From the NCBI GenBank assembly GCA_904063045.1, contig CAJFCJ010000019.1, forward strand, positions 3,044,684 through 3,108,683: a stretch of 64,000 nucleotides of DNA, written 5' to 3'. The notes under the pieces were generated by a model. That model searched no databases, was not told the DNA's origin, and was given only the letters and a program-made list of their open reading frames with translations. The position numbers and the translations under genes are program-made. The DNA is from Dimorphilus gyrociliatus (Eukaryota > Animalia > Annelida). Positions within the stretch are counted from its first letter, which is position 1; every line of letters starts with the position of its first letter. Shown piece after piece: positions 22,953 to 38,500 of this stretch.

Positions 22953-23831
22953 TTAAAAGTTAGCAAAATTGAAATGGGAGGGAATAGGAGGATTAGTAAA
23001 TGGAGTGAAGTCCATTGGCCGAGGCTGGGTTAAGTTGAGCGGAGCTGGTGTAGTTGATGACGGCACAAACGGCATTTGTAGTAATTGTAAAGGACCCCAT
23101 CGCTCCTCTGGATCATTTTGAGCGAACCAATTTGGCCGGCGATCATCTCGAATAGTTAAAAGAGCCTCGTCCTCTGACCGAGTAGTTGACGTCGATGATT
23201 CAGTAGTTGGTTCAATTAAGATGATGTCGGAACCAACATCCACATCAGAATGTTTGGCTTTTGGAAGATTTAAGGCAGCGCAAACAGAGCAATATAGTTT
23301 GTCGCACAAAGCACAATAAATATTGTAGTTATCTTTATGATGTTCGCAATCGACTGTTAACATCTGCTTCAGCGCTATCAATCTCGAAGATTTCATGGTT
23401 CCAATATATCTCATTGAATGGCCATTTCCTCGTTTTTCTTTTTTCGCTGGAATTATGTCAACGACCTGAATATCATCTTCTTCGTCATCCACTTTTCGCT
23501 TTTTTTTGCTTATTCTTCGTTCATCTACTTTCTTAACTTCAGCCAGGAGCTCCACAATCAAGCGGTTTCGGGGCAATTTTAATTGCCTACCTTCTGCCCC
23601 TAAAGCAGTAGGAATTTCTCGTTTACATTGTGGACAACAAGCCATACTTCTTCTTTCCACTTCTAACTGGTATCGAACATAATTAGAGACACAAGAGGCA
23701 CAATAGGTATGCTGACAGGGTAAAACCCTTGGATCTGTTAATAGTTCCAAGCAAATACTACATTCCAGATTCAGTTTGTTAACCTTTATTGTTACTCTAT
23801 CTGATTCTTCTCGCGAGTCTGCTAGAGCCAT
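22953..23831 (-). CDS. RING (C3HC4) plus B-box protein, truncated TRIM-like
   Basis: CSICLELLTDPRVLPCQHTYCASC...CPQC RING; CEHH-x7-CALC-x4-CSVC...H B-box2; KKRK NLS-like motif. The CDS is intronless. Confidence 0.85.
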   Translation of the reverse strand: MALADSREESDRVTIKVNKLNLECSICLELLTDPRVLPCQHTYCASCVSNYVRYQLEVERRSMACCPQCKREIPTALGAEGRQLKLPRNRLIVELLAEVKKVDERRISKKKRKVDDEEDDIQVVDIIPAKKEKRGNGHSMRYIGTMKSSRLIALKQMLTVDCEHHKDNYNIYCALCDKLYCSVCAALNLPKAKHSDVDVGSDIILIEPTTESSTSTTRSEDEALLTIRDDRRPNWFAQNDPEERWGPLQLLQMPFVPSSTTPAPLNLTQPRPMDFTPFTNPPIPSHFNFANF

Positions 23832-24170
23832 CTGTAGGTTGTTAAGTTATCTGTGATTAATGAAATTAATTTTATTTATGATTTTTACTAATGAATTGCG
23901 CACACGTCTGAATGAATCTTGAAGGTGAGACTTCAAGATTGAATAATTTCCCAGTTTTACCTCATTTAATTATGATACTATACGACACATTCTATGGCTA
24001 CTATTATAATACAAATATTTCGCTTACCTGTTCAAATAATAAAAGAATTTTCTTCTCAAGAGAATTATGCTGTCTTTAAAAGCTAAAATCTTAATAATCA
24101 TTCGAGAAAGACATAGCCGATCGGCCGTTATGAGGCTTTTCAAGTGTTCTCTCTTGTTCTGTTTTCTAAA

Positions 24171-24395: not shown

Positions 24396-26376
24396 TTAAT
24401 AAATAATCGCTGAGCTACACATCTTGTTAAGCCCACAAACGCCGGCTCCACGATAAACCAAATAATATCCATGTTCACCCCAAGTTTTTCCCCAGCTGTT
24501 CTTTACTATCCAATAAGGTTCATCTGATAATATAGTTCTTTTATGGACACCATAGCCGACTATTAGAACACCATGATCCAAGCTGGAGGGATTGCAAAAT
24601 ATTTTCCACGGATGAGCCACGCCGCCCATATAGAACTGCATAGCAAAAGCATTTATGCCAATAGATATTGGCCCTTTAGAAACAAGCCATTGAGCCATCT
24701 CTTTTTCGTTACTCGTTATATTCAATCCGCCACTGACATCTACTTTAGCATCCGATTTTTTAAATTTACATTTCTCTCCAGATCCTTCATAAGGATATTG
24801 CGATTCTGTCTCTAACCCTCCAATACTTTTAATAGCCTCATATGCGTTAGAAGGTAAACCGCCGTTACATCCTTCATCTATTTTATCACAATCAACAAGT
24901 TCTTGTTCGGAGAAGGATAAAAGCTTTCCATGTTTTATGGCATATTGCCCTTCTATGTTACCGGTGGTGCTAAAAGCCCAGCAAGAGCCACACATGCCTT
25001 GATTCTTCACTTCAGTCACAGCATTATGAGTACGCCAGTCAAAAGAGGTTGGTACAGCGACGTTAGGGACAACTGCTTCCTTTAGTCGTGCGTCGAATGA
25101 TGTATTCCATCTAGAAGGAAGCATAAATTTTCCAAATTCTTCCTCTGAGAATAAATGAAAATCAGTATATAGAAAATTGAAAGAAAATTTGTACACACCT
25201 GTTAAATCAGCAAATTTCGTAGGACCATAAATAGCAGAACCCTTATCCATTGCTTGCAATATTTCAATTTTTTTCATATTGTCATAGAATATCTTATGTC
25301 TCATTTCTTCCTCTATTGAAATTTTTATGTCATAAAGAAAATAAAGGAAGAAAATTGAAAATTATATTACCTTTAATGCTGGAATAAGTTTTACCATGTT
25401 CTTTCTTGAAAGTTTCAAACAGATCTGTATTTACCTATTAAAAACCTATTAGATAAATATTGAAAGCATGTTAAAAAATCTTACATCTCTTGCTTTCAAT
25501 TTCCATTTGAGACATTGCACACTTTTCCCTCTTAGAAACGAATATTTTTCTTTAAGCCAAGCTTGATGTAAGATTTCCGCATAACATTCTTTTATAGGGG
25601 AATCAAGTGTGACCTTTAAGCATTCGTCATTAACGTTCTGTCGATTTTTTCTACATTTCGTTGAAATGATATGAAAGCGAATTTTGTACAATACGCCGTT
25701 AACAACTTGTTTCGTTGCCCTATCGATATTAGCCAGAACTTGGGTATAGAGGGAATTTGATTCTAAGTTGTGAATCTTAACAGCAAAAGCTACTGCCTTT
25801 TTAACACTTTCTTCCTCCACATCAGCCTCGTCCTCTCCTCCGATTAAGTGCTGTTGATTATGACTTTGGACGAAGTTTGGGGGAGAGCATATAGTTTCTA
25901 TACTTTGTTCTGGAGCACCTCCAAAAAGCAAATCGCTTACTCTGATATTTGCTGAGCATTTTCGAATCTGAAAATGATATTAAAGATATTAATGCTGTGA
26001 TGGTACTTTGTTTATAAGGACAAACCGATTTGGTTGCACAAAGTGCAGTTGATATCACATCTTTTGAACAACTTGTTTCATGAACTGTAAATTTTACTTT
26101 CCATAGCTCAGCTAAAACACCCTGTATGAAATAATTATGTCTGTTAAGTATTTCACTCATTAACTATCAAAAATATACATGTTTTTTGATGATTGATATA
26201 TTGTCCAACTTTAAAGCATTTTCGATCTTGTGTTCATCTGCCCATTTTGTCAAAGCAGTGCGGGCAAGTCTCTCGGCTAGTAATTTTTTGCCTGCCTCAG
26301 TCAATCCATATGATGATACCGTTAAAAGGGAAAGAACAGCTAAAAATATCCACTGCGCAATCTTTGTGGACGCCAT
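24396..26376 (-). CDS. CTSF: Cathepsin F-like papain protease with N-terminal cystatin-like domains
   Basis: Signal peptide (MASTKIAQWIFLAVLSLLTVSSYG), two cystatin-like repeats (second with QVVNG), I29 prodomain (YGPTKFADLT), QGMCGSCWAFS, LDHGVLIVGYG and WIVKNSWG. Confidence 0.92.
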
Positions 26377-30602: not shown

Positions 30603-33600
30603 TCAAACTGACAAACTAACATAGCTATTATACTGTGCTATATTTCTCTTCAGAATATCCGAACAGGGTCCCAGAACTCTTTCGAACCGGGATCTATCTA
30701 AACGAACGCATTTTAACTGCCCTTTAGCAATTACTGTTGCTGCCCTTGGCCTATCAAGTAAAAGCGCAATTTCGCCGAAATAATCGCTAGGACCTAAGAG
30801 GTAAAAGAATTATAAGGATATTTCATGAAAAAAAATTTAAGTAGTAACCTAATCGGCCAACTTCAATTGGCTCTTCATTGTCTGATTTTCGTTGCAATAC
30901 AATTGCTTGACCTTCTGTAATGATGAAAAAGTCTTCACCGGGTTCGCCTTGCCTTACGATTTCTTGGCCATCTTCAAATTGAATCTTTTCCAGCGCGTCT
31001 GCAATCGTCATTCTCTCCCACTTATCCAAACTTTCTAAAATAGACACCTTAGACAGAAATTCGTCGTACATTTTTCGCTTTCTGATAGTCGAGCCCTATT
31101 TAAGTTAGAATTCATTGAAGATATATTTATTATTTTTGAAAATTTTTTTGAATTACCATAAGAATACGTCGATAGGAATCTCTGTCAATTCCCCATAATT
31201 TAACATCATTTTTTGCTTTAACTGTTGCAGCTCTAGGAGTACCGTAAATAAGTGCTAACTCTCCAAAACTTGCACCTTCCCCTATTGTACTGACATATTC
31301 ACCATTAACATAAATCTGTATTAAGTATAAACTGTTGAAAATGTTATTTAAAAATGAGTAGAACAGCTTACATCAACTTCACCCTGATCAATAATGTAGA
31401 AGTTATCTCCATCGTCGCCTGTAATCAAAGTTCACGCTGGTTTCTATTATTCGACGATTATTCAAAAGGCTTACCTTGCTGTATAATAACTTCATCAGAG
31501 TGTCTGTTGACTGGGAACATGGCATCAAATATATCACTGTAAAGAAACCAATCAGTTAGTACATTTCATATAAATATCTTAAGAAAATCAACCTTCTCTC
31601 TGTATCATCCAAATGAGCGAACAATACATTTCTTTGAATGGCTTTAGAAAGAGCAGCCATAGTTTTATAATCTTTGGGAACAACCTGACAAAAAACTTAT
31701 ATAGAATGATATAAAATCTCATTATTAGATAAATTCACCTTTTTTACATATGTAGCTGCATCCTCTTCTGTATACACCTCGGCTGACACAGCACCTCGTC
31801 TTGTTCGTTTCTGATCGTAGATTTAAAGCTAATTAAAATGAGGATTCAAGATTAAAAATGTAAATCGTACAGTTTTCGTTTGCTGCATGTGGGCAACCCG
31901 TTCTTCATCCTCATCGCTGACAGTGTCAGTTTGTTTGGCCTGCGCTGGTGGAGTTTGTGTAACCAAAGTTTCTTTCTTTGCCTCTTCCTATATTTATTAA
32001 TGAAGACAATTATATTAAATGATAATTTAAAGCATAAATGAAACTAGAGAAAGCAAAAAAAAATTTGTTTGAAAATATAAATGCAGCACTAAACCTTTGT
32101 ATTATAACTTCGGATCTCTTACTTTTATGCTACTCGAATTATAACTTGACCTTTCAACGCTAGACAGCAATCAATCTTAAATTATCCTCAAACTTTGCCC
32201 CTTTACTTAAATTATAACAAAACTAATTATAAAAGATAAAAGCAGCAGACGGCGTTTTAAACAGAAATCGTTTTTAAATATTCTAGATGGCGCTCTTAAG
32301 GTGATATCATTTTTCAAAGTTGCTTTTTCAAACAATATATGTAAGATAAGGTTATAGCAAGCATTTTAATGTTCTCATTATAACTATATAATTCTTTAAA
32401 GTTTTCTTATAAACATTGTAAATTTAAAATGGCGCTGGGAAATGCACTCCTACTAGATTGACCTTTCGTCAACGGCTTGCTCATTAAATAGCTTCAGGCT
32501 GAAAATAATTAGTTTCTGAGAGAAAAAAACGAGACAATTTTTTTGGAGAAAACAACTTGACCAGTAAGATCAATCAAATGATCGAGTTGATTTTATTCCA
32601 CATATTTCTCACCAGTTTTAGGTCTACATTCGCGTCTGATATCAATCTTCAAATGGAGTTTCTAATTATCTCGGTTTCGCCTGTTTCCTCTTCAGGCGTT
32701 TAAGAATAATTTCCTCTCCTTGCTCTTTTTCTACAAATTTGCTCTCTGAATGAAGTTTTTAGTTTGATGTATAAGATTTTTTTTCAAATATTCCATCTAA
32801 TTGTCAATTCTTTTATTCTTTTTTTAAAATGGGCTATTTGAGCCATAAAATCACTTATGCTGCTATTGAATAAAGGCTTTTAACTGTTTCTTGTATTACA
32901 ACTGAGGGAAGTCGTTCATTTTCCTTTCCTCAATGCAATAAAAGCGATAGCAGAAAATACAGTTAAATATATCCAGGCTTTAATTATCTAACGTATTATC
33001 AAGTCTGGCAACATTTCTTTTTATCAGCAATTTTACGATCGATCATTATCCAAAATTGCTCAAGAGACAAACAGACAAAACGGTCGGCTACTTATTGATT
33101 TTGCCCAGCTTCACTCCCACCAGAACGTATAAAAATTTACAATATCTAGAGTACGCACCTCGTCTGGCGCTTCGTTTTCTTTTGCTTCCACTTCTTCTCT
33201 CGTTTTTCTCGAAAATTTTAAGTTAATCCTAGATGCTAAATTATTCCCAGCATTTGTTGTATCTGTTTTCAACTTATCCAACCTATTGCCCATATTTTAA
33301 ATGCGGTAAAACCTCAGAATGATCGATACATGCCGTCAATATTCCGGAGATATACTAACAAAACTGCAATAGAGAGCGTTGCTGTCTGTAACAGTCCGGC
33401 AGCAGCAGCAGCCGAGAATTTATCATCGCGTCGCTACGTTACTGCCTTCTAACAAACACCGTTCGATAAAAACGGGATAAGAAACAGAAATTACAATTAC
33501 ACCTGAATGATTTAGAGATGTTATTTAAGATATACGTGCTAAATTAAGTATTTTGTTATAGGTGCTTATGATAGCGTATCACGGCCTATTTTGCTGGAGA

Positions 33601-35284
33601 GTTTGTAAAGAAATCATGGGGAAACGACTTCAATATAATTGAAATCCCTTTTATATAGCTGTTGCTATTAGCAACCATTTCTATCGGCGCCCAATAAGAA
33701 AAAACCTAACTATAGACCAGTTGCGCATAATAATGACACTAGGATGATAAATACTCCGACTTCAGGCCTTTTAATAACGCTAGAGAAAGGCCAAAATAAA
33801 TTATTATGGGTGGTAAAAATGAAAGTAATTATATTATTCACGTATCGTGAATGAGTTTGAACAAATAAAAAAAACCAAGACAAACAGTATTTAAAATCGA
33901 TATCAATTTCGTTCGTTGGACACGGTAGTGAAGCTTAAAAGAAATACCTTGTTTAACATTGATTGGAAATAATCGATCGATTGGTAAGCTAAATCGGTTT
34001 AGATTCAACTGATGGTAAATTAAGAAAGGCACCTGCTCTTTTGTTCTTTTATCTTCTTTACCTCCCTTACTTGAGCGGCTGGTTTGTTGTATAAGTGTCT
34101 TTCCATTGCATAATCCCATCAGCGTTTGTTCAGTCCAGATTATTTGATTAAGCGTATATGTAATGGAATTCTTTCTATTGAGTTCAACTATCCGTTATAT
34201 TCTTAGTTAGATTAGCAGTGTAACTTTTCGATTATCAAATATTTTCAATTTCGGCAACTAATTTATCAACTTATATCATGAACAATATTTAATATGTACA
34301 CAAAGATAACGTTTACTCGTCAAGATCTTCAAACAACATTGTATTCAATCCTAAGAGTTGTTTAATAGCTTTATGTTCTTTAAATCACCATATATTCGTT
34401 TGATTAATATAACCTCACAAGTCTTTTATATTATTATGAATCCAATTTGCTTTGGGAAGTAAATGCTGTCTATATACGCCATCTTTCGTATATTATCAAC
34501 GTACTAAAAACTATTTGTTACAAGCTTACTTAACCAAGAAACGAATCCCTTGAAAGAAAATTTTCGGAAAGTCGTTTTCCAAGAAAACGATTAAGAGATA
34601 TTAAGACATGAAAAAGAGCTTCTGCAGTATTCATTTGGACCCCCAAAATCTCATTAATCTATCAACGCCGGCACTGACGTCATTCCACCGAATTACGCTA
34701 CTATGACGACTGAGAGAATCGTACCTGAGTACGATGCCGTCCTTTTGCGTACAATTTTATCGACATTCTATCTTTTCGACACGATTTATTGCTAGTACGA
34801 GTCAAATGTTAAGTAAATATTACATTTTGCTATCGCAAAATTGTACGAATTTGTTGCCGCAATTGTTGCATTTTGGTCACAAATCTCTAACGACTATATA
34901 AATCAATAAATAAATCTACGTAATGGGTATACCTTGAATACCTAGTGAATATAATGACAACAGAATCTTAAATGAGGCAGATTGTCCTCAAATTTCCTGT
35001 AGAAAATAGTATCTTATCTGGTTCCGAAATATACCTTATAATAACATAGAGCGTTTCTCAGCAAATAAGCGCCATCATACGGATTTAGAATGGTCATAAA
35101 AGAGTAGAGGAACATTTACCTTTTCTAACCTTTCAAAATACTCTTTCAAAAAAGTATACGGCTTCTCTGGGCGACCCAAACACAATTGTATGATACATTC
35201 TTTAAGAACGTTTTGAACTTGATGCTTTTTGACATAAACTTCAACTTCCTTAAGACTGTAGTCTTCTTCACTCTGCCCAGCCAT
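30603..35284 (-). CDS. PRKAR1A: cAMP-dependent protein kinase type I regulatory subunit
   Basis: D/D exon 35120-35284 ([33 protein letters not shown]), pseudosubstrate RRGAVSAE, two CNB domains ([16 protein letters not shown]; [16 protein letters not shown]) and a 3.1-kb first intron. Confidence 0.96.
33159..33293 (-). CDS. Candidate alternative first exon of PKA-RI ([10 protein letters not shown]...EAPDE)
   Basis: ATG, 45 codons, phase-0 donor GAG|gtgcgt, in frame with the shared acceptor at 31987. Confidence 0.7.
33661..33675. promoter_or_regulatory. RFX X-box-like palindrome GTTGCTATTAGCAAC
   Basis: Perfect inverted repeat GTTGCTA-T-TAGCAAC, about 370 bp upstream of the MGNR alternative exon. 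Confidence 0.55.
34033..34119 (-). CDS. Candidate alternative first exon of PKA-RI ([29 protein letters not shown])
   Basis: ATG, 29 codons, phase-0 donor CAG|gtgcct, in frame with the acceptor at 31987. Confidence 0.68.
34725..34766 (-). CDS. Candidate alternative first exon of PKA-RI ([14 protein letters not shown])
   Basis: ATG, 14 codons, phase-0 donor CAG|gtacga. Confidence 0.45.
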
Positions 35285-35568
35285 GACTGAATCTCCACTG
35301 AAAACTGACAAAAATATCACCAGTCTATTCTGAACTGGAAACCAGACTACTAAAGTATTTGGTTTGAAGCTTTCTCGTTGCTAATAAACGGCTTCAGCTT
35401 AATTATAAATCTTTTTGAGAAGTTATTACTTTTTTGAATATTTCTTAAATATATTTAAAATATAGTCTTTTGAAATCAGAAAATCATACAGAAATACTTT
35501 CTTTATTTGAAAGATTAGCCTATTTCCGTTGATAATTTTTATTTCAACTTATTAAAGTTGGAAAGACC

Positions 35569-38500
35569 ATGGCAGTGTATTTCGATCACAAGCTTCAAGA
35601 TGCTCCCATGGGCCATCATACTTTGATGGAATGGCACAAAACTTACCCGATCTTAGCTTTGGCTTCTGATACTCAACAAGCCAAAGGCTGTCTGACATTT
35701 TATAAAGAAGATGGAGAAAAACTAAGTAATGCAAATATTCAGAGAACCATTCCTCTAACAGCAACATCATGGCACCCTATTAAGAAAGTTCTGGCTGTTG
35801 GATGGGAAAATGGCACAGTCACAATTTATAGTTTAGAAGAGCAACCTCAAGTTATTAATGAAAATCCTCCAGTGCATTCTAGTACTATAAATTTTGTACA
35901 ATGGTCATCTAATGGGTCAAAATTAATATCAGCAGACGCCGTAAGTTATTTTATTTTGCCATAAGTTAACTCTACATGTCGAATAATTCAGACTGGAGAA
36001 GTTTGTGTTTGGAAAGCTGACTCCAGAGGCCGATTGCAGCATAATCCTATGCGAAAACAGCAATTGCATGAACCTATTTCACATTGCATTTTGAGACCTT
36101 CTGTATCAGTTGATGCCACCAAGTATGTTCAGCTACTTTACGTACTGTTATAAAAGTTAACTTCTAAAACATTCTTTTATCAGTAACATAGCCGCTCTTG
36201 CTCGGGCTGCTGTAAGCGGGGACGAGAAAGCTTTGGATATGTTCAATTGGAAACCGAAAGGCAAAGCTACCCCAAAAGTAAGCTCAAATATGCTGCCGAC
36301 AGGTGAAGCAACAACATTCTTTTTGGGAGGCGATCAAGGGGGTGTTTATTATGTAAATGAAGAGGCGGAAATTTCACAATCGTTTAGCACTGAAGGAGGA
36401 GTACGGAAGTTGATGTTTTACGAAGATAAAAGCATTCTGGTAACAATAACGACAAATTCTATGCTACTACAGCATAATGTTAATCCTGACGGCGAATGTC
36501 GGGAAGTAATAAAAGTAAAATTAAGTGGCAAATCAGATGACCCAGATTTCACTTGGGCAGGTAGTGGAATTTTAGCTACAGCAACAGGAGAATCTGTTAT
36601 AAGGTGCTTCTTAACTTTTATCTTGTGATATATTTATAAAATTATGTTTAATTAGGATGTGGGACATGGAACATGAGGAAAATTTTGTGCTCTCTTTAGA
36701 TGGAAATACTGCTTTTGAGCCTGGAGAGAAAATATTTTGCGTGGCATTCTGTGAATCAAAACAAATTTTGGCAGCTGGAACCGGTTCAGGCCACATAGCC
36801 TTGTTTAAACATAAACCAGTTCATTCTTCATCACAAATGAATAGAGTAGATCCCGAGACCTGTTGGCATCATCAATCACCCTGCTCTTTATCAGGATATA
36901 TCACAAAAATTCTTTGGGGTTCAAACAAACTCCTCTTAGCTGCCAATTTGCTAGAGTCAGTTTACATAATGAATGAGCAGATCCTTCAGGCTCATTGCAA
37001 TCAGCAGACAGCAGCTGTTCAAAGCGGTCCGATGAAGCTTTCGGTTGAATTTTTCAGTACAAAACGCTATCAAGAGTTAAATACTGATATCCAAATAACT
37101 GGAATATTTACAACAAAAGAGAATATTGCAATTTGGAATGGAAAAAAATTAGTTATTTATGAAATTTCCTCAGATTCAAATATATCAGCTGCAGGAACCT
37201 TTTCAACTGATAGTCCTATTGCTTGTCTCTTTGAACAAAATGTATATACGTTAGAAACGGGAAAAGTACAAGTACGAACTTATCAAGGAACGGTTAAACA
37301 ACTACTAAATTTCACAGAATCAGATGGAGATCCCACTTATATACAAATTTGCAACAATTATTTAGTAGCCGCCTCTGCTGTAGGAACCGTTAAAATTTAT
37401 GACTTATCGAGAAGGTAAGATAATTTTCCAATATGTTTAGCATAATTCTAATATAATTCTTTCCAGAGAAGCAAAACAGATCGCATCCAAGAATATTGCA
37501 GATATGATTGCAAATTTCGGTTGTATTCAGTCGGCAAAATGTAATTCTAATGCAAGCCAAATCAGTATCATAGTAAATAAAGCAACTGGCGCTCTTGTTG
37601 ACTCAAAGCTTTATGTCTATGACGTGGAATTAGACAAATTGACCTATTTTAACTTTGAAACTGGCAGATGTGAATCAGAAGATATACTAGAGGAAAATAA
37701 CGATGAATCAGAGGAGGAGATATCTGCTGTGGAGAGAGGGCGAAAAGAGGCTGCTAGAGATATAAGAGGACGCCTTCCAATTTCACATTACTGGGATAAC
37801 AACGAATCGAGATTATTAGTTTGCGAAGCAAAAATATCAGGGTCAACAGATAAAAAACAAAATGAACATACGCGTACAACAATTTCTCTTACTAAACCAA
37901 CGGTATCAGAAGTTGAAGAGATAATGGTTGTATCTTTGTTTGTTACACAAGATCATGGGGTTATTATTCAAGACAGTTTTCCTCTAGCCGGTGATTGCAG
38001 TTCACTATTTGGTATTGATGTACCTTATTTCTATTTTATAAAAAAGCAAAGCGATGCTAGACCAGCTACTAGGAAGGTAATGAGAGATTTTATTGGTTTA
38101 GAAGATGCCGATAAAGTTGCAAGGGATGCAATGATGAATTTCAGTTTCTATCTGACACTGGGAAATATGGATGAGGCTTTTAAAGCTATAAAACTTATAA
38201 AAAGTGAAACTGTATGGGAAAATATGGCAAAAATGTGTGTTAAAACAAGACGACTGGATGTGGCTGCCGTTTGTCTTGGTAACATGAATCATGCTAGGGC
38301 TGCTAGAATGCTTAGAAAAGCTGGAGGACACGGAGAATTAGATGCTAGAGTCGCTATGTTAGCTAATCAGTTAGGTTTAACTGATGAAGCAGAACGCCTA
38401 TTGCGAAATTGCAAGAGATATGATCTTTTAAATGAGATGTATCAAGCCAATGGTCAATGGCATAAAGCTATTGAAACGGCCGAGACTTGCGATAGAATGC

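What the first reader, a model, noticed from the sequence alone, without database searches (positions are those of the whole stretch)
31987..35284. PKA-RI intron 1 holds alternative first exons that would swap the AKAP-docking domain for lipid-anchor-type N-termini
Seen in sequence: the longest intron in the window (31988-35119) contains three ATG exons with phase-0 donors matching the acceptor at 31987. These are [14 protein letters not shown] (34725-34766), MGLCNGK... (34033-34119) and MGNRLDK... (33159-33293). Each would replace the D/D exon (35120-35284) but keep the RRGA inhibitor site and both CNB domains. Established: the D/D domain mediates dimerisation and AKAP binding; Met-Gly starts are N-myristoylation substrates, and MGxC adds palmitoylation (Src/G-alpha-type dual acylation). 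Inference: monomeric, AKAP-independent, self-membrane-anchoring PKA holoenzymes chosen by promoter. Residue 6 (G, D) is not the optimal Ser, so acylation is a prediction. Alternative RI N-termini are known in some invertebrates, so novelty needs checking.
Basis: partly seen in the sequence, partly recalled or inferred. Interest (0 to 1): 0.75.

Follow-up and report, generated by a model that had tools for sequence, protein, structure and literature searches.

The report
Alternative first exons in PKA-RI
The first intron of this worm's PKA type-I regulatory subunit gene holds at least one real alternative first exon that swaps the dimerisation/AKAP-docking domain for a short "MGN..." start; the same swap is predicted in molluscs and a fly, so it is old and ordinary in kind, but apparently never studied.

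Summary
On the minus strand, three ATG-initiated, phase-0, GT-terminated ORFs lie in the 3,132-nt first intron of a PKA-RI gene, well above chance.

- **Exon C** (33159-33293, MGNRLDK...) is real. Public RNA contigs from two coded organism labels join it to exon 2 at 31987. It is under purifying selection against a diverged relative (dN/dS about 0.13). It matches an "MGNKLRKL" alternative N-terminus that replaces the D/D exon at the same junction in 15 mollusc species and a tsetse fly.
- **Exon B** (34033-34119, MGLCNGK...) is probable. In the relative, the start codon with MGLCNGK, the 29-codon length and the donor are conserved, while the middle has drifted. No RNA shows it spliced.
- **Exon A** (34725-34766) is unresolved. 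It sits in a conserved non-coding block with a perfect CRE, and the only RNA contig across it runs unspliced through its donor.

Loss of the D/D domain, with the RRGA site and both cAMP-binding domains kept, is shown. Monomeric, AKAP-independent behaviour is inferred. Lipid anchoring remains a prediction: B fits the classical myristoylation pattern and has Cys4; C lacks the small residue 6 but has the invariant Gly2-Asn3.

D/D-less R isoforms are already known in C. elegans, and acylated PKA-R in apicomplexans. This is a new member of a known kind.

The parts
35120..35284 (-). Canonical first coding exon of PKA-RI: the dimerisation/docking (RIIa) domain, 55 codons, phase-0 donor AAG|GTAAAT
   Evidence: Translation. 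Pfam RIIa, E = 1.6e-8. RNA joint 31987<->35120 in run X4. dN 0.015 / dS 0.74 against L001.
34725..34766 (-). Candidate exon A ([14 protein letters not shown], donor CAG|GTACGA): unresolved, either a rarely used first exon or part of a regulatory block
   Evidence: ORF and donor are kept in L001 (MSIILYAEGRHRTQ; 2 synonymous and 2 non-synonymous changes). The flanks are equally or more conserved. X4 contig 34628-34853 runs unspliced through the donor at depth 2.3, and no joint to 31987 was reported.
34660..34915 (-). Conserved non-coding block around exon A, with TATATAG at 34894-34900 and a perfect palindromic CRE (TGACGTCA) at 34675-34682
   Evidence: 80-90% identity in 100-nt bins, with only 1 mismatch in the 63 nt downstream of the donor (about 98%), while intron 1 overall is 63% identical to L001 and dS is 0.7-1.3.
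34033..34119 (-). Candidate exon B ([29 protein letters not shown], donor CAG|GTGCCT): probable lineage-specific alternative first exon with a Gly2/Cys4 dual-acylation-type start
   Evidence: A 23-nt 100% identical match to L001 covers the ATG and MGLCNG, and Lys7 is kept too. Both species have exactly 29 codons with no indel, followed by GGT and a conserved TTTCTTAATTTA. The middle 20 codons are neutral-like, and the ORF beyond the donor is not conserved (stop after 5 more codons in L001). It fits the PS00008-type pattern. There is no RNA joint; only an unspliced 264-nt contig in X1.
33159..33293 (-). Exon C coding part ([45 protein letters not shown], donor GAG|GTGCGT): verified alternative first exon of the MGN class
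   Evidence: RNA joint 31987<->33159 with GT..AG ends in X2/X3 (one sample) and X4. dN 0.048 / dS 0.374 against L001. Genomic orthologues P0001 and P0002. N-terminal motif shared with mollusc and Glossina RI isoforms. ATG context aaaatATGG.
33294..33665 (-). 5' UTR and promoter region of exon C, with three upstream ATGs (33617, 33426, 33331), a (GCT)4 repeat at 33401-33412 and TATAAA at 33650-33655. The exact TSS is not determined.
   Evidence: The X2/X3 contig is contiguous over 33158-33665 and the X4 contig over 33158-33394. 33251-33550 is 88-96% identical to L001, with 93-96% over 33351-33550. Motif positions.
33075..33158 (-). Conserved intronic stretch just downstream of exon C's donor; possible splicing-control element
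   Evidence: Nearly identical to L001 over about 85 nt, after which the alignment collapses. A minor read-through joint 31987<->32925 (depth 30 against 324) shows the donor is sometimes skipped.
31871..31987 (-). Exon 2 (EEAKKETL...QQTKT), the common acceptor for the alternative first exons; a fast-evolving linker
   Evidence: Joints from 35120 and 33159 both land at 31987, and the next intron 31811-31870 (60 nt) is spliced out. Translation. dN 0.24 / dS 1.33.
31737..31810 (-). Exon 3 with the pseudosubstrate inhibitor site ([13 protein letters not shown])
30606..31696 (-). Remaining coding exons: both cyclic-nucleotide-binding domains and the C-terminus ..YNSYVSLSV*
   Evidence: Pfam cNMP_binding on three exon pieces. 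tblastn of full-length RI proteins maps exons at about 31583-31696, 31473-31538, 31369-31419, 31157-31321, 30847-31095 and 30606-30797.

Best explanation
This is the 5' end of a PKA type-I regulatory subunit gene with several promoters and first exons.

The upstream first exon encodes the D/D domain. A second first exon inside intron 1 (exon C, ATG at 33293) is transcribed from its own strongly conserved promoter/5' UTR. It is spliced in phase to the shared exon 2. The product is an RI isoform in which 45 residues starting MGNRLDKLK replace the D/D domain, while the linker, the RRGA inhibitor site and both cAMP-binding domains are unchanged.

Exon C is the annelid version of an old protostome alternative N-terminus (consensus MGNKLRKL), found at the same exon junction in mollusc and Glossina RI. 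A further first exon (B, MGLCNGK...) is probably used in the same way in this worm lineage. Exon A may be a third, or may only be part of a CRE-containing regulatory block.

Inferred, not shown: without the D/D domain these isoforms cannot dimerise or dock to AKAPs, so they should form R:C heterodimers. The invariant Gly2-Asn3 of C, and the Gly2/Cys4 of B, most likely direct N-myristoylation (plus palmitoylation for B). That would tether type-I PKA to membranes without an AKAP.
For: Shown:
- Gene identity and exon content.
- RNA joints 31987<->33159 (X2/X3 depth 324, X4 depth 89) and 31987<->35120 (X4 depth 121). Both have GT..AG ends and occur in contigs that also lack the 60-nt intron 2.
- Exon C is conserved in two further lineages with a coding signature: omega about 0.13, and synonymous sites faster than the flanking UTR.
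- 22 of 114 retrieved RI proteins start with MGN and lack RIIa. M1, G2 and N3 are invariant across 17 aligned N-termini.
- In five bivalve isoform pairs the MGN N-terminus replaces exactly the 55-56-residue D/D exon at ..LEK|EQK.., the same junction as here. The same holds in Glossina compared with Hermetia.
- Several MGN isoforms come from cDNA-sized contigs of 1.7-3.3 kb.
- Exon B's start heptapeptide, length and donor are conserved while its middle drifts.
- Orthologues of A, B and C are the only such candidates in the relative's intron.

From the literature:
- Ser6 is not required, and Asn3/Gln3 facilitates myristoylation when Ser6 is absent, as in the PKA C subunit and HK1S (PMC4736023).
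- Toxoplasma PKAr1 uses Gly2/Cys5/Cys7 acylation instead of AKAPs (PMC6152992).
- D/D-less kin-2 isoforms exist in C. elegans (PMC9692727).
- In D. gyrociliatus the median intron is 66 bp, and introns with ATAC peaks are much larger (PMC7854359).
Against: - The RNA joints come from runs whose contigs differ 3-10% from the window, so they are a sister strain or species, and those runs are only guessed to be RNA. The one near-identical run (X1) shows only unspliced pieces.
- Contig depth cannot rank isoforms.
- No joint was seen for A or B. X2-X4 have no coverage of B at all, and A's donor is read through.
- Exon C fails the PROSITE-type rule at residue 6 (Asp here; Arg, Gln or Lys in molluscs).
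- No acylation, localisation or oligomeric-state data exist.
- No MGxC start was seen among the 120 listed RI proteins, so B has no support outside this lineage.
- The annelid-mollusc similarity of C rests on about 9 N-terminal residues plus gene position.
Confidence: 0.8

Rival explanations
1. Only exon C is a real coding first exon. A and B are not translated exons but conserved regulatory DNA (promoter or enhancer pieces, short upstream ORFs) that happens to keep an ATG and a GT.
For: - No RNA joint was seen for A or B.
- A lies in a block whose non-coding flanks are as conserved or more so, with a perfect CRE and a TATA-like box.
- A's substitutions are 2 synonymous and 2 non-synonymous.
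- B's donors are weak (GTGCCT, GTTCAT), and all synonymous sites in its first 7 codons are frozen, which fits a DNA- or RNA-level constraint as well as a protein one.
Against: - B keeps exactly 29 codons, with no indel and no stop, across about 60 nt of neutral-like divergence. It also keeps the GT in the same phase, while the flanking intron is full of gaps.
- Its conserved part coincides exactly with ATG plus an acylation-type heptapeptide.
- Two Met-Gly phase-0 exons in one intron are expected 0.013 times by chance.
- Short D/D-less first exons of 5-20 residues are common in gastropod and beetle RI models.
Confidence: 0.3
2. The alternative N-termini are real but are not lipid anchors. They simply produce a soluble, monomeric, AKAP-free RI that buffers the C subunit, or they carry a protein-interaction or N-terminal-acetylation/degron signal. 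The conserved MGN start would serve that purpose.
For: - Residue 6 of the MGN class is Asp, Arg, Gln or Lys, outside the classical small-residue set.
- Many other protostome D/D-less first exons have no Gly2 at all, so loss of the D/D domain by itself seems to be a selected outcome.
- The C. elegans D/D-less isoforms are described as having unknown function (PMC9692727).
Against: - Gly2 and Asn3 are invariant in 17 of 17 N-termini, while everything after residue 9 is free to vary.
- Asn3 is the reported facilitator for Ser6-less NMT substrates (PMC4736023).
- The Glossina version is a textbook MGNSLS.
- Basic residues at positions 4, 7 and 9 fit a myristoyl-plus-basic membrane motif.
Confidence: 0.35
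3. The C-to-exon-2 joint is assembly noise or a rare aberrant splice with no functional isoform.
For: Only de Bruijn contigs, not raw reads, were available, and a minor aberrant joint (31987<->32925) exists in the same runs.
Against: - The same joint occurs in three runs from two samples and three studies. Its contig depths are of the same order as the canonical joint, with GT..AG ends and in frame.
- There is purifying selection.
- Orthologous isoforms occur in many species.
Confidence: 0.03

Closest known systems
Mollusc PKA regulatory subunit 'isoform X1' models (e.g. Magallana gigas, Octopus bimaculoides, Pecten maximus, Haliotis asinina; RefSeq) and the Glossina fuscipes Pka-R1 isoform
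   Same: They start MGN(K/R/N/Q)(L/F/I)x(K/R/Q)(L/F/I), lack RIIa, and replace exactly the D/D exon at the ..LEK|E.. junction. The rest of RI is unchanged.
   Different: The window's exon is shorter (45 aa against 86-154 in bivalves; the unnamed P0223 and P0257 are closest in size). It has Asp rather than Arg, Gln or Lys at residue 6. Beyond residue 9 there is no alignable similarity. The mollusc forms are computed models, and I found no paper on them.
C. elegans KIN-2 isoforms lacking the D/D domain (Pastok et al. 2013, as cited in PMC9692727)
   Same: A single R gene gives isoforms without the dimerisation/docking domain, which are expected neither to form tetramers nor to bind AKAPs.
   Different: Sequence relatedness of the N-termini was not tested here because the paper is not in the held library. 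No lipid-anchor claim is known to me for them.
Apicomplexan PKAr1 (Toxoplasma gondii)
   Same: A PKA regulatory subunit is anchored by its own N-terminal Gly2 myristoylation and Cys palmitoylation instead of an AKAP. This was shown with G2A and C5A/C7A mutants (PMC6152992).
   Different: It is constitutive in a protist that lacks the AKAP system. It is not an alternative isoform sitting beside a D/D-containing one, and there is no sequence homology of the N-terminus.
Lipid-anchored AKAPs of vertebrates (smAKAP for RI, AKAP18/AKAP7 alpha)
   Same: They give the same predicted outcome: type-I PKA held at membranes by a myristoyl/palmitoyl N-terminus. PMC12083921 places the membrane-tethered smAKAP as a late, vertebrate-era addition.
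   Different: In vertebrates the lipid is on a separate adaptor that needs the D/D domain. Here it would be on R itself, with the D/D domain removed. The acylation details for these AKAPs are from my own knowledge and were not checked here.
Mammalian PRKAR1A alternative first exons 1a/1b
   Same: Alternative promoters and first exons upstream of a common exon 2.
   Different: The mammalian ones are non-coding and do not change the protein (own knowledge, not checked here).
Sperm hexokinase HK1S (MGQICQ)
   Same: An isoform-specific alternative N-terminus without Ser6 that is nevertheless myristoylated, helped by Gln3, and palmitoylated on a nearby Cys (PMC4736023). It is a precedent for both C (Asn3, no Ser6) and B (Gly2 plus Cys4).
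   Different: An unrelated protein; an analogy only.

Membership tests
PKA type-I regulatory subunit (RI) | N-terminal RIIa-type dimerisation/docking domain | tested here: met
   Pfam PF02197, E = 1.6e-8, on exon 1.
PKA type-I regulatory subunit (RI) | Pseudosubstrate inhibitor site RRxA (not the RII-type RRxS) | tested here: met
   [13 protein letters not shown] in exon 3.
PKA type-I regulatory subunit (RI) | Two tandem cyclic-nucleotide-binding domains and close identity to RI orthologues | tested here: met
   PF00027 on three exon pieces. 80-92% identity of the CNB exons to mollusc, nemertean and other RI proteins.
MGN-class alternative N-terminus of protostome RI | Starts Met-Gly-Asn, with Leu/Phe/Ile/Met at 5, Lys/Arg/Gln at 7 and Leu/Phe/Ile at 8 | tested here: met
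   Alignment A1: M1, G2 and N3 are invariant in 17 sequences. The window has L5, K7, L8 and K9, as in Haliotis and Patella.
MGN-class alternative N-terminus of protostome RI | Encoded by an alternative first exon that replaces the D/D exon at the same phase-0 junction | tested here: met
   RNA joint 33159->31987. Common-suffix analysis of five bivalve isoform pairs. Glossina compared with Hermetia.
MGN-class alternative N-terminus of protostome RI | Alignable homology beyond the first ~9 residues | tested here: not met
   Identity to the window is 10-32% over 45 residues, with no conserved column after position 9. Membership therefore rests on the motif plus gene position.
N-myristoyltransferase substrates | Gly at position 2 after the initiator Met | tested here: met
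   Met for B and C. Exon A (Met-Ser) does not meet it.
N-myristoyltransferase substrates | Classical pattern G-{EDRKHPFYW}-x(2)-[STAGCN]-{P} (PROSITE PS00008, pattern typed from my own knowledge) | tested here: inconclusive
   B passes in both species (G-L-C-N-G-K). C fails at residue 6 (Asp) in both species. PMC4736023 states that Ser6/Thr6 is not required and that Asn3/Gln3 compensates; C has Asn3.
N-myristoyltransferase substrates | Myristate actually attached | not testable with these tools
   Needs metabolic labelling or mass spectrometry.
Dual-acylated (myristoyl + palmitoyl) N-termini | Cys within a few residues of Gly2 | tested here: met
   B has Cys4, conserved in L001, which adds Cys15. 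C and A have no Cys.
D/D-less R isoforms (C. elegans KIN-2 type) | Expressed mRNA that omits the D/D-coding exon but keeps the inhibitor site and CNB domains | tested here: met
   The exon C joint lands on exon 2, whose contig continues into exon 3. Shown for C only.

The most novel reading that the evidence does not exclude
Protostome type-I PKA has an ancient, conserved but unstudied second mode of localisation. A promoter-selected RI isoform (MGN class; exon C here) has lost the D/D/AKAP-docking domain and is N-myristoylated through a Gly2-Asn3 signal. It would form monomeric R:C units tethered directly to membranes, the functional counterpart of vertebrate smAKAP-anchored RI. The dinophilid lineage has added a second, dual-acylated (MGLC) version.
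Probability: 0.4. Interest if true: 0.65.

Novelty: new member of a known kind. Interest (0 to 1): 0.45.

Why it matters
PKA signalling specificity in animals is usually explained by AKAPs binding the D/D domain of R subunits. An evolutionarily old, well-expressed RI isoform that discards that domain and carries its own probable lipid anchor would be an AKAP-independent way to place type-I PKA. So far that has been demonstrated only in apicomplexan parasites.

The compact locus makes this easy to test. Three candidate first exons, their promoters and a CRE sit within 3.1 kb, in a genome whose median intron is 66 bp. The mollusc and fly counterparts mean a result would generalise. As it stands the finding is an annotation-level confirmation plus a conserved motif, not a demonstrated mechanism.

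Tried and rejected
1. Rfam scan of 31700-35600 on both strands at E <= 1 gave no hit, so the conserved intron blocks are not a known RNA family.
2. There is no other gene in the intron. The only ORFs of at least 50 aa on either strand are the read-through extensions of B and C and unconserved ORFs. The 93-codon ORF from B's ATG is not conserved (stop after 34 codons in L001).
3. Pfam on the exon B and C peptides gave nothing.
4. A word search with the D/D exon, meant to fetch more relatives' introns, gave only three ORFs. The two new contigs (L005, 1.1 kb; L006, 1.9 kb) are too short and show no A/B/C-like exon.
5. X1, the coral metatranscriptome that is 99% or more identical to the window, has two contigs on exon 1 and exon B, both unspliced, and no cover of exons 2 and 3. 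I read this as DNA or pre-mRNA and drew nothing from it.
6. The patchy low-depth cover of the intron in X2-X4 coincides with the blocks conserved at 90% or more. It is probably an effect of the 90% likeness cut-off, not evidence of extra exons.
7. Most close near-full-length hits of the big HMMER search were mis-modelled proteins. I used only the good C-terminal half of one of them (P0026) as the query.
8. Literature searches for a myristoylated metazoan R subunit, for Pka-R1 plus myristoyl, and for the MGNKL(RK)/MGNSLS strings found nothing relevant. Pastok 2013 is not held.
9. So the window species' own annotated or assembled isoforms were not retrieved.


Full report
**What is at the locus**

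The gene lies on the minus strand. Exon 1 (35120-35284) translates to MAGQSEED...[11 protein letters not shown] and is a Pfam RIIa dimerisation/docking domain. Exon 2 is 31871-31987. Exon 3 (31737-31810) carries the pseudosubstrate [13 protein letters not shown]. The remaining exons down to 30606 hold two cNMP-binding domains and end in ..YNSYVSLSV, as RI proteins do. I did not verify that. It fits the 60-nt intron 2 and the published median intron of 66 bp (PMC7854359), against which this 3,132-nt intron is about 47 times the norm.

**Checking the observation**

The three ORF exons are exactly as described: A at 34725-34766, B at 34033-34119 and C at 33159-33293. Each starts with ATG and ends in phase 0 before a GT.

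A loose scan finds 15 ATG/GT combinations in the intron, so sequence alone is weak evidence. With a length of at least 14 aa and a donor score of at least 5 of 7, the intron has 4 distinct donors. That compares with 0.41 expected in 2,000 first-order Markov shuffles (P = 0.0015). It has two Met-Gly starts against 0.013 expected. These thresholds were chosen after seeing the data.

**RNA evidence (Logan contigs only, one call allowed)**

- Runs X2 and X3 (one sample, organism A) and X4 (organism B) contain a joint 31987<->33159 with GT..AG ends. This is exon C spliced in frame to exon 2.
- X4 also has the canonical joint 31987<->35120.
- The same contigs lack the 60-nt intron 2, so they derive from RNA, even though the run type is only guessed.
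- Contig depths of the C joint (324; 89) are of the same order as the canonical joint (121). The tool warns that depth cannot rank isoforms.
- The C contig is contiguous with the genome up to 33665 (X2/X3) or 33394 (X4). The exon therefore has a 5' UTR of 100 nt or more, and the TSS is not fixed.
- A minor joint 31987<->32925 (depth 30) reads through C's donor into an in-frame stop.
- For exon A, the only contig that crosses the donor (X4, 34628-34853, depth 2.3) is unspliced.
- For exon B, X2-X4 have no cover. X1, a coral metatranscriptome 99% or more identical to the window, has an unspliced 264-nt contig. X1 also reads unspliced through the exon 1 donor and lacks exons 2 and 3, so it is probably DNA or pre-mRNA and uninformative.
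- The X2-X4 contigs differ from the window by 3-10%, so the RNA evidence comes from a sister strain or species.

**Cross-species conservation**

A word search with the exon C peptide found two 68-residue genomic ORFs (P0001 and P0002, 89-91% identical). Their contigs gave the orthologous locus of a more diverged relative (L001, 17.4 kb).

Between the window and L001, real coding exons show the following:

| Exon | dS | dN |
|---|---|---|
| Exon 1 | 0.74 | 0.015 |
| Exon 2 | 1.33 | 0.24 |
| Exon C | 0.374 | 0.048 |

Intron 1 overall is 63% identical, so anything well conserved in it is constrained.

- **Exon C** is 90% identical, with dN/dS about 0.13. Its 5' UTR and the 85 nt after its donor are at or above the identity of the D/D coding exon, peaking at 93-96% over 33351-33550. 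Non-synonymous sites are as constrained as the flanks, while synonymous sites are freer. That is a coding signature.
- **Exon B** has a 23-nt perfect match covering the ATG and MGLCNG, and Lys7 is also kept. About 20 codons of neutral-like divergence follow, with no indel. Both species have 29 codons, followed by GGT and a conserved TTTCTTAATTTA. The ORF beyond the donor is not conserved. This is the pattern expected of an exon whose function lies in its first residues and its splice site.
- **Exon A** ([14 protein letters not shown] against MSIILYAEGRHRTQ) keeps its ATG and donor. It lies in a block whose non-coding parts are at least as conserved. That block includes TATATAG (34894-34900) and a perfect CRE, TGACGTCA (34675-34682), inside a 63-nt stretch with a single mismatch just after the donor.
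- In L001's intron, the only ATG/phase-0-donor candidates of at least 10 aa are the orthologues of A, B and C, plus an internal-ATG variant of B and an alternative-donor variant of C.

**Wider comparison**

The exhaustive HMMER search with the 83-residue CNB exon supplied a cuttlefish RI model. Its intact C-terminal half was then used in a word search.

- Of 114 newly retrieved RI proteins, 22 begin with MGN and lack RIIa.
- They come from 15 named mollusc species (cephalopod, gastropods, bivalves), Glossina fuscipes and four unnamed assemblies. Several come from cDNA-sized contigs.
- Their consensus is MGNKLRKL, and the window's exon C is [10 protein letters not shown]1, G2 and N3 are invariant in the 17-sequence alignment, and nothing is conserved after about residue 9.
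- In five bivalve isoform pairs, the MGN N-terminus (86-154 aa) replaces exactly the 55-56-residue D/D exon at ..LEK|EQK... This is the junction used here (..ERLEK|EEAKK).
- The Glossina MGNSLS... form joins at |EQVKLDA, as the canonical Hermetia protein does.
- Many gastropod and beetle models have other short, D/D-less first exons of 5-20 residues, comparable to A and B. None of the 120 listed proteins starts MGxC.

**Mechanism**

Shown: exon C mRNA omits the D/D exon and keeps the inhibitor site and both CNB domains.

Inferred from established knowledge of RI: without the D/D domain the protein cannot dimerise or bind the AKAP helix, and it should form an R:C heterodimer.

Predicted: lipidation.
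- B fits the classical pattern and has a conserved Cys4.
- C fails at residue 6.
- PMC4736023 states that Ser6/Thr6 is not required, and that Asn3/Gln3 facilitates myristoylation in its absence. Its examples are the PKA catalytic subunit and the alternative-N-terminus isoform HK1S. The invariant Gly2-Asn3 of the MGN class fits that rule.
- Toxoplasma PKAr1 is a demonstrated case of a self-acylated R subunit replacing AKAP anchoring (PMC6152992).

**Novelty**

D/D-less R isoforms are described for C. elegans kin-2 (PMC9692727, citing Pastok 2013). The MGN isoform already exists as automated models in sequence databases. I found no paper on a myristoylated metazoan R subunit or on these N-terminal strings, and a 2025 review of PKA/AKAP evolution does not mention acylation of R. 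The open-access library is incomplete, so this absence is weak evidence.

My verdict is a new member of a known kind. It carries a useful lead: an old, conserved, uncharacterised MGN-class RI isoform.

**Limits**

- Only assembled contigs could be laid on the window, once.
- No tool for NMT or palmitoylation prediction was available.

Noticed in passing
window 34675-34682 (-): A perfect palindromic cAMP-response element (TGACGTCA) sits inside the PKA-RI gene's first intron. It lies in a 63-nt stretch with a single mismatch to L001, just downstream of candidate exon A's donor. It could give cAMP/CREB feedback on R-subunit isoform expression.
   Followed up: partly
window 33314-33617 (-): Exon C's strongly conserved 5' UTR holds three upstream ATGs (33617, 12 codons; 33426, 23 codons; 33331, 5 codons). 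All three ATGs are kept in L001. This hints at translational control of the MGN isoform.
   Followed up: partly
window 33401-33412 (-): A (GCT)4 microsatellite in exon C's 5' UTR differs by one unit in the X2/X3 contigs and in L001. It probably explains why the X4 contig breaks at 33394.
   Followed up: no
window 32925-33158 (-): A minor RNA joint 31987<->32925 (depth 30 against 324) reads through exon C's donor to a downstream site that is GG, not GT, in the window sequence. There is an in-frame stop 15 codons after the normal donor, so the product would be non-productive.
   Followed up: no
window 32444-32728, 33848-33908, 34286-34392 (-): Further islands in intron 1 are 79-82% identical to L001. 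They have no ORF/donor candidate and no Rfam match, and are probably regulatory.
   Followed up: no
L005:364-552 and L003 (same sample SRR23372216): One sequencing sample holds two different RI D/D exons, 96% and 80% identical to the window's protein. This means either two related worm species in one sample or a paralogue. The full-length canonical protein of the second is P0204.
   Followed up: partly
window 24399-25361 (-) and 22956-23846 (-): Long open segments downstream of the RI gene look like a papain-family (cathepsin-L-like, ..CGSCWAFS..) protease and a RING-finger-type protein. In L001 the upstream neighbour of RI, on the other strand, is IFT140.
   Followed up: no
P0158, P0172, P0173, P0175, P0186, P0212-P0216: Gastropod and beetle RI models show up to four different short, D/D-less alternative N-termini per gene. 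Multiple first exons therefore seem to be the rule for protostome RI genes.
   Followed up: partly
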